Assembly: GCF_009834535.1 (NCBI RefSeq)
Contig: NC_045704.1
Span: 21,328,001-21,392,000 of the forward strand
Direction: 5' to 3'
Source of the DNA: Camelus ferus
Lineage: Eukaryota
Length of the DNA: 64,000 nt
Shown: one piece after another, positions 26,601-34,846 of the stretch
Numbering within the stretch: the stretch's first letter is position 1
Layout: each line of letters opens with the position of its first letter
The notes under the pieces: model-generated
What the model was told of the DNA's origin: nothing
The model's database searches: none
Seen by the model: only the letters and a program-made list of their open reading frames with translations
Made by a program: the position numbers and the translations under genes

Positions 26601-28559
26601 GGTAGGCTGGGGGCTGGAAGGGGTCTGGCAAAGGGCTTTGTTTCCAGAGAGGTCCTGAGGAACAGTGGGGGAATAGAGAGGCAGCAATAGCGGATGTCAC
26701 TCTTGCTGGTGACAAGGCCACCTGCTTCCTGTGTGCATGTGTGGGAGGGGAAGAGCTGGTGGATCCCTGTGACTGCCTTTGGGGACAAACTGGGGGGAGG
26801 GTCAGAGAACCAGGGAGGCTGTTCTGATAGTTCAGATGGGAGGTGACAGATAGCCCAGGGTGTGGGCACTGGGGAGATTCTGGTAAGGTTTTGGAGTTAG
26901 AGCCAACAAAACTTGCTGATGGAGTGGATATGAGTATGTACGAGAGACAGCATTCCAGGATGACCAAACTCCTGGCCTGAGCAACTGGAAAGATGAGCAT
27001 CCTTTGACCGGGTAGAGGAGGGGAAGCAGGTTTGGGGGGAAGTGCCAAGGTTTGGGCACACTGAGTTGGAAATGCCTGATGGATCTCCCTGTGGAGAAAC
27101 TGAATGACCACAGCTGCCTCTATAAGTTCAGGGGATAAATCTGGTCTGGAGATGTAAATTTGGGGGTTGATGGCCTATGGATGGTATTTAAAGCCATGAG
27201 ACGGGGTGAGATCATTGAGGAAGTGAGTCCAGACAGAGGCGCAACACCAAACACACCACCTCCCCCCAACACCAAGAATGGATGAAGAGGAGGAAACAGC
27301 CAGGAAAACAGAAGGGGCAGCAAGCGAGGGAGGAGAATCAGGAGAGCATGGAGTCTTGAAATCAGGGGAGAAATATGATTTACATCGTCACCAAGTTAAG
27401 AACTGAGAATGAGCCTCCCACTGGAATGTCAGTCTGCTAGAGGGCTGGGAATTCCTGCCTGCTGAGTTCATAGCTATACCATAGCACCCAGCAAAGTGCC
27501 TCCCTTGTGGTAATTAATTATTTTTAATGATGAATGCATAAAGGAGAACTGACCTCTGAAAAAGAAGGGGATGTGGGAAAGAGGGAGAAATTGAGTCCAC
27601 CTATATCACTTTTATGTATACAGATCTTTCCTCTCTGGAGACCAGGGAGTCCAGAACCCCAGTCGCCTTCTTCCTCAGGACCCAGTAATAATGCCACCAC
27701 CACACGCCTATGCCAGCCCAGGATCCAGGAGTCAAGGCCTCCAACACCCCCTTGGACAGAGATGCCAAAACCCAGGTCCCCAGTTCCCTCTTCCTTCAGG
27801 AGTCCTCCACCCCAGGCCCCTTCTCCCTCAGACCAAAGATGGGGCTCCCAAACCCCTCTTTCCGGGTTGACTCAGGAGTCTGGCCCTCAGAGTCAGCCCC
27901 GCCCATTCAGAGACTGGGTTTGCTACAGCGCAAAGTGGGGACTCCCGGGCCTGTGGGCGGGGCCCTGCCTAGGACTGGGCGGTGCCAGAACCTCAGTTTA
28001 AAAACTCGCGGGGGACCCGACACAAGATCGGGGACCCGGCGGCGGCTCCGCGGGGAAACAGCGAGACTGGCGCAGCGCCGAGGCCGGGGCCCTGGGGGCC
28101 CGCAATCCACGCCACGGAATCCCCGAGGTAACGGGCGGGGAGGTGAGGCGCGCTGGCCCCTAAGAGTGGGGCTGGGAGGCGGTCACTTGAGGCTCTAAAG
28201 GATTGAGCTGGAGCACTAAGTCCTGGGTCCTGAGAGTGAGGGTACCCGGTGTTTGGAGGGGCAGAAGGCCCAGACTCCTTGGTCGTGATAGAGGAGCGGC
28301 TGGGATTCTGGACTCCTGAATCCCAGGGGGGCGGGGGCGTTAAAGGACTGGGGATCCGGTATCCTAGGTCCCGCGGGTGAAAGCGCTGGGAGCCCGGACG
28401 CCTGGGTCCTGGGAGGAGGGGGCTGGCGGCCTGGACTCCAAGCTCCAGAAAGAGGCTGGATCGTGTCCTTGGGGGGCGTGGTTGTTTAAAATCAGCCAAG
28501 GTTTCAGTGGGGAAGGTCCGGCGCTTGGCCGCAGGGATCCACGCTGGTCGTGACCCTGC

Positions 28560-28740
28560 CTCCGCCTCGGGATTTCCCGAGTCACCACTCGGCCTGGGTC
28601 CCGGGGCTGAGGAGGAATTCCCCACGTGCGCCACGCTTGGCCACGCATCGCGTCTCGGAGCCGGACACCTGGGGCGCGGGGCAGAGAGGAAGAGGGAGGT
28701 GGAAGATTCCCTTGCGTGAGCTCTGTGACGTCAGCGCGTC
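28560..28740 (+). promoter_or_regulatory. NFKBID promoter: kappaB sites plus full CRE within a CpG island
   Basis: GGGATTTCCC 28569-28578, GGAATTCCCC 28614-28623, CACGTG 28623-28628, GGAAGATTCCC 28701-28711, TGACGTCA 28726-28733. Confidence 0.75.
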
Positions 28741-30460
28741 GCGTCTGGGCTGTTTCCGAGCCCGCCCTACTCCGCTTAACTCTTTCTCAGCCGGAACTGA
28801 GCTCGGAAGGGTGAGGGCTGAGGGCTGAGGGCCTGGCCTTCCTGGGTCGTGCGAACCAGGAGTCTGGAAACTGGGGCTCCCAGGACCTAGGGGGAAGTAG
28901 GCTGAGAGCCCGGACTTCTGGGTCCTGGGGAAGGGGGTGCGGGTCTCCCAGACTCCTGCGGATTGAGGCTGGGCTCCTGGCCCTGAAGAGAGGGCGAGGT
29001 CTGAACCTTTGGATCCCTGATGAGCTAGGGGGCTATCGACTTCGTGGTTTCTCGGAGATCGGGGCTGGGGACTCGGATGGCTGGTTTCTTGAGGAAAGGG
29101 TATCAGGGCAGCTTGCAGAGCAGAGAGATAATTGGGATATGTGCGTCTCTGGGAAGGGATGTCTGGCGACGTCCGGAATCCCTCAGTACTGGGAGATCTG
29201 GGGGTGAGGTGGAGTGGGATTTTTCACGGAAGTGGCGGGGGGGGGGGGTTGCAGCAGAGGGCACCCTCCACCCCCTTCCTCATTTTCCACGACGCTGGTG
29301 GAAAGTTGGGTCAGAGGGGAAAGTGCGGAGCAAAAGGAAGGAAACGGCGGAGGCGGCGCAGCACTCGAAATCTTAGATTGGCTTTGGAGTTCTCAGGCGG
29401 CATCAGTGTGCCAGTTTTTCCGCGCGGGAGGGCGATCAAATCCACGCCCCCGCGTACTTGGGTGACTTAAGGACCCCTTATAACTTCCCTCCCACCTCAC
29501 CCCGCAGTGAGCCGGAATGAGCGCAGCCACTGCCCATCACAGACGGTGAAGAAGCTCCTGGAAGAACAGAGGCGCCGCCAGCAGCAGCCTGACGCTGCTG
29601 GGCTACCGGTGAGGCCCGTGAAGCCCTGTAAACTACAACTCCCATGAGGCCATGTCCTGTTGGGCAGGGGCTTGCTGCCTTGCTGGGCCCTCAGGGCTGA
29701 CTCAGATGACCTGTAGGTGGGGGAATGGGTGCTGAGGACTCTGCCAGATAAATTCACCCTTGTTTCTTTTTGCTTCTGCCTCTACAGGGACAGTTCCCGC
29801 CTCCCCTGGCCCAGCCTCTGACCCCATCTGTGAATGAAGGTGAAGCCAGTAAGTCTGGAAACTTACCTGGTTCCCTCAGCTCCCAGCCCCAGCTTCCCTC
29901 AGGGACTCAAACATCCCAACTCTCAGAACTTTAGGGAATTTAGGAGTTAGGCCCTCATTCTTGCTGAGACCTGGAAGAAGTTTGATCTCCCGAAGTCTCA
30001 GGGGCCCAGGCTCCCAGCCTTTCGGTGCTCTAGGAGTCTAGGCCCTCAACCCCTCAGTGTCCCAGGTGCCTAGGTCCTCAAAATCCAAACTTCCAACCCC
30101 TTGGTGTCCCAGGATTCTGGGTCCAAGCCCCGTGGTGCCCCAGAAGTACTTGCTTTCAGTAACTTGGGAGACTCCAGGTTCCTGTCTGGGCTGTGACTTC
30201 CCTAACTCTGGTAACCAGGCCTGCCCCTGCTCCTCCTCTCACATGCAGGCCATACTCACTTCCCAGCACACCAGGAGACTGTGGGTTCTGGACTTGGCAG
30301 CCTGGCCCCCTCCACGGGCTTTCCAGACTGGAACCCCAACACGCATGCTGCCTACACAGACAGCCACTACTCTTACCCTGCTTCTGCTGCTGACGTTTTC
30401 CTGGCTCCTGACTTCTACCCACCCTCGGACCCAGGGCGGCCGTGTCCGTTTCCCCCGGGG
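28740..30460 (+). other. NFKBID: NFKBID upstream exons (5' leader or non-AUG N-terminal extension)
   Basis: Donor at 28810/28811; exons 29508-29608, 29788-29839 and 30249-30466, all GT-AG, splice into one stop-free frame continuous with ATG 30461. The first-exon start is approximate. Confidence 0.8.
29632..29650 (+). promoter_or_regulatory. ZNF143 SBS-like motif in NFKBID intron
   Basis: ACTACAACTCCCATGAGGC matches the ACTACA-n-TCCCA composite motif. Confidence 0.45.
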
Positions 30461-33400
30461 ATGGAGGTGAGATTCAGAGTGGGAACAGGATGCTGAAGGG
30501 CCCCCAAGATTCCCAGTTGTCCTCATGCAGCATCCTGAGATGTCTGGGGCTAGATTAAGATCCCATTCCTCAGATGGGCAAAACTGAGGCCCAAAGGTCC
30601 AGGGTCACTTGGCACAAATGGGACACCCAACCACTCTACCTGGCACTCTGTATGTGTATATGTCTGTGGTGGGCTAGGAAGAGGGGATTCTCAGCTGACT
30701 GGCTCTCTCCACCACCTACACCCTTCAGGAGCCCCTGGATACCCGGCTCTATGTAGACCCTTCCCTGCCACAGACGGGATCCTGGAGAGGTTCTGGACTC
30801 CCCTCAGGACCCCCACAGTTGCCCCCTGTGGTCACCGGACCATCCCTGGACACTGCCCGTGCTCACATGCTGGCTTTAGGGCCACAGAACCTGCTGGCCC
30901 AGGATGAGGAGGGAGACACGTGAGTATAGGGGAGTGGAGTTTGCAGGCTTCCTGCTCAGCTAGGGTGCTGTGCTCACTGCTGCCTCCCGCCCATCCTCAG
31001 GTTCCTGCACCTGTTTGCGGCTCGGGGGATGCGCTGGGCAGCATACGCTGCAGCTGAGCTGCTCCAAGCGTACAGACATCTGGACATTCGTGAGCATAAG
31101 GGCAAGGTGAGGGCCAGGGGCTTGGATTTCTGGATCTGAGGGCAGAGGGTTTGGGGGCTTGGATTCCTGGTTTTCAGACGGGAAGGGGCTAAGGGGCTGA
31201 GGGCCCAGACTGATGTTTCCTGATACCTGCAGACCCCTCTCCTGGTGGCTGCTGCTGCCAACCAGCCCCTGATTGTGGAGGATCTACTGAACCTGGGAGC
31301 TGAACCCAATGCCACTGATCATCAAGGACGTTCTGTCTTGCACGTGGCCGCTACCTATGGACTCCCAAGGGTCCTCTCGGTATGTCCAGCTGGAATGAGA
31401 TGAATGAGATGGACTGGTTGCCTAGATCCTAGCTTCCAGAACTAGGAGACCTGGGGAGACTCTAACCCAGCACTCTGCCTTCTTCTTCTCCCAGGCTGTG
31501 ATTAACTCAGGGGTTCACGTTGACCTAGAAGCCAGAGACTTCGAGGGTAAGTTGGGTGGTGGAGAGGGTGGGTGTGGCTAGTGGGCTGGGTGGGATGAGA
31601 GCTCCAGATGCAGAGCCCTCCCTGTCTCTACTCTGCAGGCCTCACTCCACTCCACACAGCCATCCTGGCCCTCAATGTTGCTATGCACCCTCCTGACCTA
31701 TGTCCCACGGTGCTGAGTACCCAGGCCCAAGACAGGCTGGCTTGCGTCCAGATGTTGCTGCAGATGGGTGCTGACCACACCAGCCAGGTGAGCTGGGCAG
31801 TGGGCAGCTGGCCCCTAGGAGGGCATGTGGGATGGGGGCTCCTGGATGTCCAGGGCCTCTCAACAAATGCTGACTTGTCTCTTCCCAGCTGTGAGACCTT
31901 AAGCACATTACTTGACTTCTCTGTGCCCCAGTTGTCAACTGTGAATAACATTACTGACCTTAGCTTATATTTATCAAGCACTTACTAGTCATCAAGCACT
32001 GAGTGTCATGGATTAGCTCATTGAATCTCCACAAACACCCTTTGATGCGTGTGCCATTATTACTTTCTCTGTTTCACTGATAAAAAAACTGAGGCACAAG
32101 GACTCAGAAATCTTATTGCTTATGAGTGTCAGAGAGGGAATTAAAACTCAGGTGGGCTGACCCCAAAATCTAGCTTTTAATAATTATACCCTCCTCCTTC
32201 CTGACAGTAACTCCTTCACAGGCTGGCTGAGAATTAAACATCCACTCATTGTTTTGGGCTTTTTTTTTTTTTTCAGTTAAAGAATTTTGAACACAGATAA
32301 AGTACAGAAAGTAATATAATGAGCTCATGTACCCAACATCAATAACCAGCAACTCATAGCCGGTCTTGTCCCATCCATTTCTCTGCTCTCCTGTATTATT
32401 TTTAGGCAAATTCAGGCATAAAATTTTATCCATAAATGTCTGTATGTCTTTAAAAGATAAGAAATATTTTTAACCTCAGTACCATTATTCCACCTTAAAA
32501 ATAATTAACCATCTCATACATAATATCAAATATCCTGACGGTGTTCGAATTTTTGTTTGGCTCTAAAGTGACATATGTTTACTTTTTTCATAAAACAAAC
32601 AACTAGGATCCAAATAAAACCCACACATTGCAATGATATGTCCTTTTACATTGACATTTAGAACTTACTCTCCATCTCTTTCTTTTTTCTACATAATTTA
32701 TTTAGTGAACCAACTAGGTTGTTTTGCCCTATATAAACACAAAATTTTTAATGTTTACTGTCATTACAGACGCTTTAAAGGCACATAATGGGGGGAGGGT
32801 GTAGCTCAGTGGTAGAGCACATGCTTAGCATGCACGAGGTCCTGGGTTCAATACCCCGTACCTCCTCCAGATATAAATAAATAAATAAACCTAATTACCT
32901 CCCCCTCATAAAACAAAACAAAAAAAAAAAAAAAAAGAAAGGCACATAATAAAGTCTCATTATGGAAAGTGCCTTTATTTGCTTCAAAAGATGAAGAGAA
33001 CAATTCAGTATGGAAGTAGATACAAGCTTAGGTTGTCCACTGATTAATGCTGCTCAACTCTCATCCTTGTAAAGTACAGCCCACGTGGGATGTGGGTGCA
33101 TTTTACTGTGTTTAATAGAATGTGGGGTGGCCAGTGCAGCTGCTAGTCCAGAGAGCTCCTTTGGAGGAACAGAAAAGGAGTCTTTTTCTTAAAGATGCTT
33201 GGGCTGGAAAATTGTCTTAATAAATGTACAGTTCTGTGATGCGTGTGATCTGAATGGTACCCCCACAACCTGGTGTTCTTGTACAGTGCACAACACATAC
33301 AACCATATAGGGCCGCTTCTACAGCCCAGGTCAGCTAAAGCTGAATCCTTGGTACCCGCGAGTGCTTGCAAAGGGGAGACAGGGTCTCTAAAGGCTCGCG

Positions 33401-34846
33401 GGTTCCATGAGAGAAGGCCTGGGTGTGAGAACTAGCCTGACCTCTACCATTCCCCACCCCACAGGAGATCAAGAGCAACAAGACTGTTCTGCACTTGGCT
33501 GTGCAGGCTGCCAACCCTACTCTGGTTCAGCTGCTGCTGGAGCTGCCACGGGGAGACCTGCGGGCCTTTGTCAACATGAAGGTGGGGGCCTAGGCTGGAA
33601 TGTGCAGATGGTGTGAGACATGGCAGACAGGGGCAGGGGGATGTTAGGAGGCCTGTGGGCTGTGGCTGTGGAGGGGACAATGCATGGGACATGGGCGGGG
33701 ACTACATAGGATGAGGATGTAGACTGGGGGCCTGTGTCCAGCATAGGCCGAGGGGTGTGTGGAATGTGGTTGTGGAGGAGGTTCTGGGATGTGAAAGGGG
33801 GCATGAGGGATGTGGATGAGGCAGAATGTGAGGGTGAGGCCCAGGCCAGCTGAGTCTGAGTCCTTAGCAATCCTCCCTTCAGCTGTCCCCAGGCCCACGG
33901 GAATACAGCCCTCCACATGGCAGCTGCCCTGCCCCCAGGGCCGGCCCAGGAGGCCATTGTGCGGCGCCTGCTGGCAGCTGGGGCGGATCCAACACTGCGC
34001 AACCTGGAGAACGAGCAGCCTGTCCACTTGCTGCGGCCCGGGCCGGGCCCCGAGGGGGTGAGCACTGACCCCGCCCTGACTGCAGGGTGACCTAACCTGG
34101 TGAACTCCTGACCCCACCCATTCCTGCCTTTAGAGGGTGACCTGTAATCTCAGGAGGAGACTTTGACCCTTATCCAACCGTGACTTCAAAATGTGCCCCT
34201 TGACCTCAGTGTTTGATCCCTTGCCTTGTACTGGTGGCTCCTCCTGACCTCTGTTTCAACCCTGACCTTAAAGTATGACCTCTACTTCCAACCCCGAATC
34301 CTGACCTCAAGGAATGACCTTTGATCCTCAAGTATGACCTTTAGCCCCCTGCCCCTGAACTCTTAGTCCTGACCTCAAAGTGGGATTTTGTTCTCACCTC
34401 AAATATGACTCTGACCCCTCGCCTCTCCTGTTTGACTCCCCGTCCTCAATGCTAGTCCCCAGGTGGGAACCTCCTACCAGCCACACCTTTCCCTTCGTCC
34501 CCAGTTCTGGCTCCTGAGCCTTTACTCTGTGTGAATGAACCTTCACCCCCAAGCCCACGTCTTGCCTCAGAACCTCTGAGCTTCAAACTCAACTAGCCCC
34601 ACTCACTTCTCCTCTCTAACCCCCAACTTCATGGGGTATGTCTGCCCCACCTCTCCTTGCAGCCTCCCAAACTCCTCCCCCTNNNNNNNNNNNNNNNNNN
34701 NNNNNNNNNNNNNNNNNNNNNNNNNNNNNNNNNNNNNNNNNNNNNNNNNNNNNNNNNNNNNNNNNNNNNNNNNNNNNNNNNNNNNNNNNNNNNNNNNNNN
34801 NNNNNNNNNNNNNNNNNNNNNNNNNNNNNNNNNNNNNNNNNNNNNN
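30461..34846 (+). CDS. NFKBID: NFKBID / IkappaBNS atypical nuclear IkB (ankyrin repeats); last coding exon falls in the N gap
   Basis: ATG 30461-30463. Exons 30461-30466, 30729-30919, 31001-31106, 31233-31379, 31495-31546, 31639-31787, 33465-33581, 33893-34057, all in phase. Peptides include LAQDEEGDTFLHLFAARG, GKTPLLVAAAANQPLIVEDLL, EIKSNKTVLHLAVQAANP and AHGNTALHMAAALPPGP. The terminal exon (expected LRQLLKRSR...) is not visible; a candidate acceptor at 34661-34662 precedes the gap 34683-34846. Confidence 0.95.
32790..32937 (+). mobile_element. tRNA-Ala-derived SINE (camelid vic-1 type) with TSD
   Basis: Head GGGGGGAGGGTGTAGCTCAGTGGTAGAGCACATGCTTAGCATGCACGAGGTCCTGGGTTCAATACCCC, then (TAAA)n, CCTAATTACCTCCCCC and poly-A. 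Perfect 13-bp TSD AAAGGCACATAAT at 32777-32789 and 32938-32950. Confidence 0.9.
34683..34846. other. Assembly gap (164 N) covering the NFKBID last coding exon
   Basis: Run of N. Confidence 0.99.

What the first reader, a model, noticed from the sequence alone, without database searches (positions are those of the whole stretch)
28789..30463. 122-codon spliced, AUG-less frame extends IkappaBNS N-terminally
Exons 29508-29608, 29788-29839 and 30249-30460 join in matching phases into VSRNERSHCPSQTVKKLLEEQRRRQQQPDAAGLPGQFPPPLAQPLTPSVNEGHTHFPAHQETVGSGLGSLAPSTGFPDWNPNTHAAYTDSHYSYPASAADVFLAPDFYPPSDPGRPCPFPPG-ME, with no stop and no in-frame AUG. The upstream exon (donor 28810) misses this frame by one base. 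Candidate starts are the junction GUG (aagGUGa), ACG/GUG at ~29543-29548, or CUG 28797 (G at -3) if one G of GGG 28809-28811 is spurious. A Pro/Ser-rich N-terminus would make IkappaBNS resemble IkappaBzeta, which has a transactivation N-terminus. I recall NFKBID being proposed as a non-AUG-extended gene and a larger IkappaBNS band being reported; both need verifying.
Basis: partly seen in the sequence, partly recalled or inferred. Interest (0 to 1): 0.7.

Follow-up and report, generated by a model that had tools for sequence, protein, structure and literature searches.

The report
Known CUG-started long form of NFKBID

Summary
The window holds a camelid NFKBID gene. The three exons do join into an open frame with no stop and no AUG.

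An alternative first exon (1a) carries CUG 28067 in the context agaCUGg. It splices at 28127|gt into exon 2 in frame, giving 145 codons before AUG 30461.

- **Conservation of the start:** the CUG, A at -3 and G at +4 are kept in 8 of 8 mammals read, including koala and platypus.
- **Conservation of the frame:** the ORF is intact in 6 of 6 genomes. All exonic indels are multiples of three. dN/dS is 0.23, against 1-2 in the other frames.
- **Exon 1b:** Its frame is not conserved and neither is CUG 28797.
- **Exon 3:** the conserved donor is 29848, not 29839.

This is already known. GENCODE annotates a 142-codon non-AUG extension in human with Ribo-seq support. A 2026 preprint shows the ~55 kDa long form predominating in CD8 T cells, with a functional N-terminus.

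The N-terminus is ancestral in bony vertebrates and starts at AUG outside mammals. Its invariant helix resembles the OCA peptide helix at E=0.027.

The parts
27997..28004 (+). TATA-like TTTAAAAA box upstream of exon 1a. The start of transcription, about 25-30 nt downstream, is inferred.
   Evidence: Invariant block GTTTAAAAACTCGCGGGG in 6 of 6 placental genomes. Koala has GGATTTAAAGCG at the matching place.
28067..28069 (+). CUG initiation codon of the long isoform, context agaCUGg (A at -3, G at +4)
   Evidence: It is the first in-frame near-cognate codon after the presumed start of transcription. CTG, A-3 and G+4 are kept in camelid, sheep, deer mouse, sloth, lemur, bat, koala and platypus. 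A 1-nt indel 12 nt upstream breaks the frame between species. In public gene models the residue is Leu when internal (15 of 15) and Met or Leu only when first.
28067..28127 (+). Coding part of exon 1a: 20 codons plus 1 base, donor GAG|gtaac
   Evidence: About 94% identical across six mammals. Variable columns by codon position are 3/1/9. It joins exon 2 in frame.
28569..28810 (+). Alternative promoter and non-coding exon 1b. It holds kappaB-like sites (28569-28578, 28614-28623, 28700-28711), a CRE TGACGTCA (28726-28733) and donor 28810|gt.
   Evidence: The binding sites are conserved. The transcribed part has indels that are not multiples of three, and CUG 28797 is not conserved. TGA 28798-28800 lies in the extension frame.
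29508..29608 (+). Exon 2 (101 nt). It encodes the invariant TVKKLLEEQRRR helix motif at 29543-29578.
   Evidence: Same length and phase in 6 of 6 genomes. Pooled dN/dS for codons 1-54 is 0.11, equal to the ankyrin exons. The motif is kept from Polypterus to mammals.
29788..29848 (+). Exon 3 (61 nt) with the conserved donor A|gtaagt.
   Evidence: Alignment of six genomes. The pig mRNA contig L004 uses the site equivalent to 29848.
30249..30466 (+). Exon 4. The extension runs to 30460. The canonical AUG of the short form is at 30461-30463.
   Evidence: The frame is kept, with only 3-nt and 6-nt deletions in bat and deer mouse. dN/dS of the last 50 codons is 0.32.
29200..29507 (+). Conserved intronic, promoter-like region just upstream of exon 2. 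ATA 29480-29482 sits where sloth and lemur DNA has an in-frame ATG; squirrel and mole gene models start with Met at this position, and the deer mouse ATG is out of frame.
   Evidence: 78-88% identity to other mammals. The pig mRNA contig L004 reads through it. ATG, ATA, ATT or GTA occur at this place depending on species.

Best explanation
This is the 5' part of a camelid NFKBID gene. Transcripts that begin at exon 1a carry a CUG codon (28067) in a strong Kozak context, downstream of a TATA-like box. It is the first near-cognate start a scanning ribosome meets. Initiation there reads through exons 1a, 2, 3 and 4 for 145 codons into the canonical AUG frame. The product is the long isoform, called IkappaBNS-L or IkappaBdelta-L: about 143-145 extra residues on the ankyrin-repeat core. 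The extension is rich in proline, serine and glycine. It has two conserved islands: a basic helix (TVKKLLE..R) and an aromatic/acidic stretch (FPDW...Y.D). Shown here: the anatomy, the conservation of the CUG and its context, the conservation of the frame, and purifying selection. Taken from papers: translation in human cells (Ribo-seq) and a ~55 kDa predominant protein in mouse T cells whose N-terminus is needed for effector function. Inferred: splicing of exon 1a to exon 2 in this species, the position of the transcription start, and that the human annotated start is this CUG.
For: Exon 1a joins exon 2 in frame, and there are 145 codons from the CUG to the AUG. The CUG, A-3 and G+4 are kept in 8 of 8 mammals, including a marsupial and a monotreme. 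A 1-nt indel breaks the frame just upstream of the CUG. The ORF is intact in 6 of 6 genomes with exon lengths 61/101/61/212, and the only indels are 3 or 6 nt. Pairwise dN/dS is 0.13-0.43 in frame against about 1-2 out of frame. Variable sites by codon position are 38/29/78. Pooled dN/dS is 0.11 for codons 1-54, the same as the ankyrin exons, with dS about 0.39 in both. The human GENCODE extension is 142 codons. The human partial protein P0002 has exactly 142 residues before the canonical Met and begins at the exon 1a peptide. The bioRxiv version of Fedorova et al. lists NFKBID among 16 annotated non-AUG genes clearly supported by Ribo-seq. The long form predominates in mouse CD8 T cells and its 143-residue N-terminus has a function. 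On the spliced mRNA three out-of-frame AUGs (29517, 29834, 30345) precede the canonical AUG. This would disfavour the short form on these transcripts.
Against: No RNA or ribosome data were seen for this species, so use of exon 1a and its junction with exon 2 is inferred from conservation. The published PhyloCSF score for the 50 codons next to the AUG is negative, -398. That is the least constrained part, with dN/dS 0.32 in my count. The codon at the human start was not read directly. Reported sizes disagree (70 kDa, ~55 kDa), and no size was computed here for the camelid long form. A downstream hairpin that might aid CUG use is not more stable than shuffled sequence (z = +1.9) and shows essentially no covariation: 1 of 17 predicted pairs has a compensatory change and the covariation term is unfavourable.
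Confidence: 0.85

Rival explanations
1. The long form starts inside or at the edge of exon 2 (junction GUG, ACG 29543, GUG 29546), on transcripts that begin at exon 1b or in the intron just upstream of exon 2.
For: These near-cognate codons exist in frame, and GUG 29546 and the junction GUG have A at -3. Exon 1b sits behind a conserved kappaB/CRE promoter, so such transcripts are likely to be abundant after stimulation. A pig mRNA contig starts in the intron and lacks exon 1a.
Against: This would leave the 20 exon 1a codons untranslated, yet they vary mostly at third positions (3/1/9) and keep their frame. None of these codons combines CUG with a full Kozak context. An out-of-frame AUG at 29517 lies before ACG 29543 and GUG 29546. 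This may be a minor extra source of shorter long forms rather than the main start.
Confidence: 0.1
2. CUG 28797 in exon 1b is the start, and the one-base frame mismatch is an assembly error in the GGG run at 28809-28811.
For: CUG 28797 has G at -3, and removing one base would restore the frame.
Against: Exon 1b differs between six mammals by indels that are not multiples of three. The CUG is absent in sheep, sloth and others, and no frame is conserved there. A fully in-frame conserved alternative exists in exon 1a.
Confidence: 0.02
3. The frame is an untranslated 5' leader that is open by chance in GC-rich sequence.
For: 3-5% of shuffles are open. The PhyloCSF score of the AUG-proximal 50 codons is negative.
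Against: The frame is open in every genome examined, indels are multiples of three only, and dN/dS is 0.23 against more than 1 in the other frames. A homologous N-terminus is annotated, starting at AUG, in reptiles, frogs and Polypterus. Ribo-seq and protein data are published.
Confidence: 0.02

Closest known systems
Human NFKBID long isoform (GENCODE ENST00000641389, non-AUG start, 142-codon extension) and mouse IkappaBdelta-Long (470 aa, ~55 kDa)
   Same: Same gene, same exon structure and same exon 1a peptide. The extension length is nearly the same: 142 codons in human, 143 in mouse, 145 here.
   Different: It differs only in species-level detail. The camelid has Ser rather than Gly at the exon 3/4 junction, an in-frame TGA in its exon 1b leader, and ATA where some species have an intronic ATG.
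IkappaBzeta (NFKBIZ), an atypical nuclear IkappaB whose N-terminus carries an OCA motif, an NLS and a transactivation domain
   Same: Both have a C-terminal ankyrin core preceded by a long N-terminus (for IkappaBzeta described as largely unstructured; for NFKBID inferred from its composition) holding a short basic helix. The NFKBID helix keeps the V-K-x-L-L-x-x-x-R pattern of OCA helices.
   Different: The NFKBID N-terminus is far shorter. It lacks the coil half of the OCA motif that contacts DNA. Neither it nor the motif profile reached significance against Pfam or PDB, where the best value was E=0.027. Homology to IkappaBzeta itself was not tested, because no NFKBIZ sequence was retrieved.
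Other conserved CUG- or non-AUG-extended regulators listed (MYC, WT1, BAG1, TEAD1/3/4)
   Same: [quoted passage not shown]
   Different: Here the extended form is the ancestral protein, started by AUG in non-mammals. The AUG of the short form appears only in placentals.

Membership tests
NFKBID (IkappaBNS / IkappaBdelta) orthologue | Ankyrin-repeat core orthologous to NFKBID, in the conserved neighbourhood HCST(DAP10) - NFKBID - APLP1 | tested here: met
   Downstream exons at 30723-34060 match NFKBID proteins. The match is 95.5% to a Camelus ferus model. Ank Pfam domains are found in the pig orthologue. Orthologous loci show DAP10 upstream and an APP-family gene downstream. The neighbours were not checked in the window itself.
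Conserved non-AUG-initiated N-terminal extension | Open frame upstream of the annotated AUG, in frame with it, with no in-frame AUG | tested here: met
   145 codons from CUG 28067 to AUG 30461, with no stop and no AUG.
Conserved non-AUG-initiated N-terminal extension | Near-cognate codon in a good Kozak context, conserved across species | tested here: met
   CTG with A-3 and G+4 in 8 of 8 mammals.
Conserved non-AUG-initiated N-terminal extension | Protein-coding constraint downstream of the start, and loss of frame conservation upstream of it | tested here: met
   dN/dS is 0.23 in frame against 1-2 in the other frames. Indels are multiples of three only. A 1-nt indel lies 12 nt upstream of the CUG.
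Conserved non-AUG-initiated N-terminal extension | Direct evidence of translation (ribosome footprints or protein) | not testable with these tools
   Literature only: Ribo-seq support in human and the ~55 kDa long form in mouse T cells. Nothing is available for camelids.
OCA motif (POU2AF1-3, IkappaBzeta) | C-terminal alpha-helix with two packed leucines and an essential arginine four residues later | tested here: inconclusive
   T, V, L, L, E and R are invariant in 24 vertebrate NFKBID sequences. The top PDB hit of the motif profile is the OCA-T2 peptide helix, at E=0.027. The spacing matches OCA-T1 L25, L26 and R30.
OCA motif (POU2AF1-3, IkappaBzeta) | N-terminal coil that contacts octamer DNA and the POU domain | tested here: not met
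   The profile alignment covers only the helix. The sequence before it in NFKBID varies between vertebrate classes. The Pfam scan (E up to 10, though HMMER filters drop most matches above ~0.1) returned no OCA-related family.
OCA motif (POU2AF1-3, IkappaBzeta) | DNA-dependent binding to POU2F factors | not testable with these tools
   This needs a binding assay.

The most novel reading that the evidence does not exclude
The invariant TVKKLLE..R helix at the start of the NFKBID long form is a surviving half of the OCA motif shared with its relative IkappaBzeta. It docks on POU-specific domains, or on a similar hydrophobic cleft. That would make IkappaBNS-L, but not the short form, a cofactor for both NF-kappaB and POU factors. 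It would also explain why only the long form drives effector programmes. In this reading the long form is the ancestral vertebrate protein and the textbook 313-327 aa protein is a truncation that arose in placentals.
Probability: 0.2. Interest if true: 0.65.

Novelty: already known. Interest (0 to 1): 0.2.

Why it matters
For this genome the practical value is annotation. Gene predictors that insist on AUG produce many ad hoc NFKBID models, including a fusion with the neighbouring TYROBP gene in Camelus ferus. The correct long form starts at CUG 28067. Biologically, the long isoform is already annotated in human and mouse. A 2026 preprint shows it to be the predominant, functionally distinct form in CD8 T cells, so the finding adds nothing new in kind. 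Two side results may interest specialists. First, the N-terminus is ancestral to bony vertebrates, and the canonical AUG is absent from marsupial and platypus models. Second, its most conserved element resembles the OCA helix. This gives a testable idea of what the N-terminus binds.

Tried and rejected
- **Whole-extension family search:** Pfam and PDB sequence searches with the pig long-form N-terminus and the window's exon peptides found no family at E up to 10.
- **Downstream RNA hairpin as an aid to CUG initiation:** the exon 1a RNA folds less stably than shuffled sequence (z = +1.9). The invariant 6-bp GC hairpin about 17 nt after the CUG never varies, so it cannot be tested by covariation. 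This idea is not supported.
- **CUG 28797 with a sequencing error:** rejected on the lack of conservation in exon 1b.
- **Donor 29839:** rejected as the main donor because it is not conserved, whereas 29848|gtaagt is invariant and is used in pig mRNA.
- **Ivanov et al. 2011 as the source of the NFKBID prediction:** the gene is not named in that paper's main text. Its inclusion among the 24 annotated genes comes from Fedorova et al..
- **Failed look-ups:** three orthologue look-ups (shrew, pika, meerkat) returned no locus. One literature search on band sizes was wasted because of how the protein's name is spelled. The Alpsoy 2024 paper is not held in the library.
- **NFKBIZ comparison:** no NFKBIZ sequences were retrieved, because the ankyrin-core search listed only NFKBID orthologues. 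No profile-to-profile test against the IkappaBzeta N-terminus was therefore run.
Full report
**1. What the window holds**

The region is the 5' part of NFKBID. Downstream exons at 30723-34060 match NF-kappa-B inhibitor delta proteins from many mammals. The best match is a Camelus ferus model at 95.5% identity, so the window is from a camelid. Orthologous loci show the same neighbours: DAP10/HCST upstream on the other strand and an APP-family gene downstream.

**2. The observation**

They join into 121 codons plus a junction GUG, with no stop and no AUG. The other two frames of the same 365 nt carry 4 and 5 stops. In the extension frame, the exon ending at 28810 has TGA at 28798-28800. Openness alone is weak evidence: 3-5% of mononucleotide shuffles are open.

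**3.

A search of 1.84 billion representative proteins with the exon 4 peptide found four relatives. A follow-up search with a long model found 57 relatives across placental orders. All carry the same N-terminal sequence. Upstream of the conserved V-S-R-N-E-R-S-H-C they diverge into many ad hoc beginnings.

One beginning recurs: (M/L)AQRRGRGPGGPQS.PRNPR. That peptide is encoded in the window at 28067-28127, in an exon ending GAG|gtaac. This exon 1a joins exon 2 in frame.

Its first codon is CTG 28067 in the context agaCUGg. It is the first in-frame near-cognate codon downstream of an invariant TTTAAAAA box at 27997-28004. From the CUG to the canonical AUG at 30461 there are 145 codons.

**4. 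Comparative test**

I fetched the genomic loci of sheep, deer mouse, two-toed sloth, ring-tailed lemur and horseshoe bat, plus a pig mRNA contig. Koala and platypus were added later.

- **Start codon.** The CTG, A at -3 and G at +4 are present in all eight species. Twelve nucleotides upstream, a 1-nt indel shifts the frame between lineages. Coding constraint therefore begins at about the CUG.
- **Public models.** The residue at this position is Leu whenever it is internal (15 of 15). It is Met or Leu only when it is the first residue, which is the signature of an annotated non-AUG start.
- **Exon structure.** All six genomes keep exon lengths 61/101/61/212. The only differences are a 6-nt deletion in sloth exon 3, and 6-nt and 3-nt deletions in deer mouse and bat exon 4.
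- **Stops.** The frame has no stop in any species, while the other frames have 4-7 stops each.
- **Selection.** Pairwise Nei-Gojobori dN/dS is 0.13-0.43 in frame and about 1-2 in the shifted frames. Variable columns by codon position are 38/29/78. Pooled dN/dS is 0.11 for codons 1-54, identical to three ankyrin exons of the same gene. It is 0.29-0.32 for the rest. dS is about 0.39 throughout.

The extension is therefore protein-coding and under purifying selection.

**5. Corrections to the anatomy**

The conserved donor of the middle exon is 29848|gtaagt. It is invariant in six genomes and is used in the pig mRNA contig.

Its transcribed part differs between species by indels that are not multiples of three. 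CUG 28797 is not conserved. Exon 1b is a non-coding alternative leader, and no sequencing error needs to be invoked.

A third 5' end lies in the intron just upstream of exon 2. The pig mRNA contig reads through it. Sloth and lemur DNA, and squirrel and mole gene models, place an in-frame ATG nine codons before the junction. At that position the camelid and sheep have ATA, the bat ATT and the pig GTA.

**6. What is already known**

- **Annotation.** Fedorova et al. (Nat Commun 2022) list NFKBID among 24 genes with non-AUG extensions annotated in GENCODE v35. The transcript is ENST00000641389.1 with a real extension of 142 codons.
- **Link to exon 1a.** The human partial protein P0002 begins with the exon 1a peptide and has exactly 142 residues before the canonical Met. 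This ties the annotation to this CUG. The human codon itself is inferred, not read.
- **PhyloCSF.** Their score of -398 applies to the 50 codons next to the AUG, which are the least constrained part in my count.
- **Protein evidence.** A 2025 review still called the 470-aa mouse isoform unverified. A June 2026 preprint then showed that the ~55 kDa long form predominates in stimulated CD8 T cells. It also showed that the 143-residue N-terminus is needed for effector function, while the ankyrin core suffices for accumulation. An earlier report of a 70 kDa nuclear form and a 35 kDa cytoplasmic form is cited.

The finding is therefore already known.

**7. Mechanism**

On exon 1a transcripts the CUG is the first usable start codon. 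Ribosomes that pass it meet three out-of-frame AUGs before the canonical AUG:

- 29517, opening a 10-codon uORF;
- 29834, opening an 86-codon ORF that overlaps the main AUG;
- 30345, within that same overlapping ORF.

The long form should therefore be favoured on these transcripts. This last step is inference.

A downstream hairpin that could aid CUG recognition exists, but it is not supported by stability or covariation.

The extension is 57% Pro, Ser, Gly, Ala, Gln and Thr. It matches no Pfam or PDB family.

**8. Beyond the finding**

NFKBID models from marsupials, platypus, turtles, squamates, frogs and Polypterus all carry an N-terminal region with the motif P.QTV(K/R)(K/E)LLE.(K/R)R. In non-mammals it starts at an AUG 10-30 residues upstream of the motif. 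Marsupial and platypus models lack the canonical Met of the placental short form. The long form therefore looks ancestral, and the short form looks like a placental addition. This rests on gene models and on only two non-placental DNA loci.

A profile of the motif from 24 vertebrates has T, V, L, L, E and R invariant. Its best hit among 177,635 PDB sequences is the OCA-T2 (POU2AF3) peptide helix, at E=0.027. The L-L-x-x-x-R spacing matches the OCA-T1 residues that do not tolerate mutation. IkappaBzeta is known to carry an OCA motif.

The coil half of the motif, which contacts DNA, is not recognisable in NFKBID. I treat this as a lead, in agreement with an earlier scan note on the same helix.

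**9. Verdict**

Novelty: already known.

Noticed in passing
window 28569-28735: The promoter of exon 1b holds conserved kappaB-like sites and a perfect CRE (TGACGTCA). The camelid lacks a 15-nt stretch with an extra GGGGATTCC site that the five other mammals have.
   Followed up: partly
window 29200-29507; L004:537-830: The intron upstream of exon 2 is conserved like a promoter (GGGATTTTTCACGGAAGTGG and more), and a pig mRNA contig reads through it. Sloth and lemur DNA, and squirrel and mole gene models, have an in-frame ATG where the camelid has ATA 29480; this ATG would start the long form with an AUG on such transcripts.
   Followed up: partly
window 29517-29549, 29834, 30345: Three out-of-frame AUGs precede the canonical AUG on the spliced mRNA. 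One opens a 10-codon uORF. The other two lie in an 86-codon ORF that overlaps the main AUG. The 29834 AUG is not conserved in deer mouse, bat or lemur.
   Followed up: partly
P0092-P0129 (marsupials, platypus, reptiles, frogs, Polypterus): The N-terminal region is ancestral to bony vertebrates and starts at AUG outside mammals. The Met of the placental short form is replaced by Leu in marsupial models and is absent from the platypus model.
   Followed up: partly
window 29543-29578; alignment A1: The invariant TVKKLLE..R helix gives its best PDB profile hit to the OCA-T2 peptide helix (9pfn_B, E=0.027). The L-L-x-x-x-R spacing matches essential OCA residues.
   Followed up: partly
P0017, P0065, P0077 and other public models: Public NFKBID gene models invent many different AUG-bearing 5' ends. 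Examples are a Camelus ferus fusion with a TYROBP-like transmembrane segment, and afrotherian models that read exon 1a in the wrong frame.
   Followed up: no
window 28811-28833 and 29234-29246: A GAGGGCT unit occurs three times just after the exon 1b donor, against two copies in the other mammals. A run of about 12 G lies in the intronic promoter-like region, where the pig has a shorter, interrupted run.
   Followed up: no
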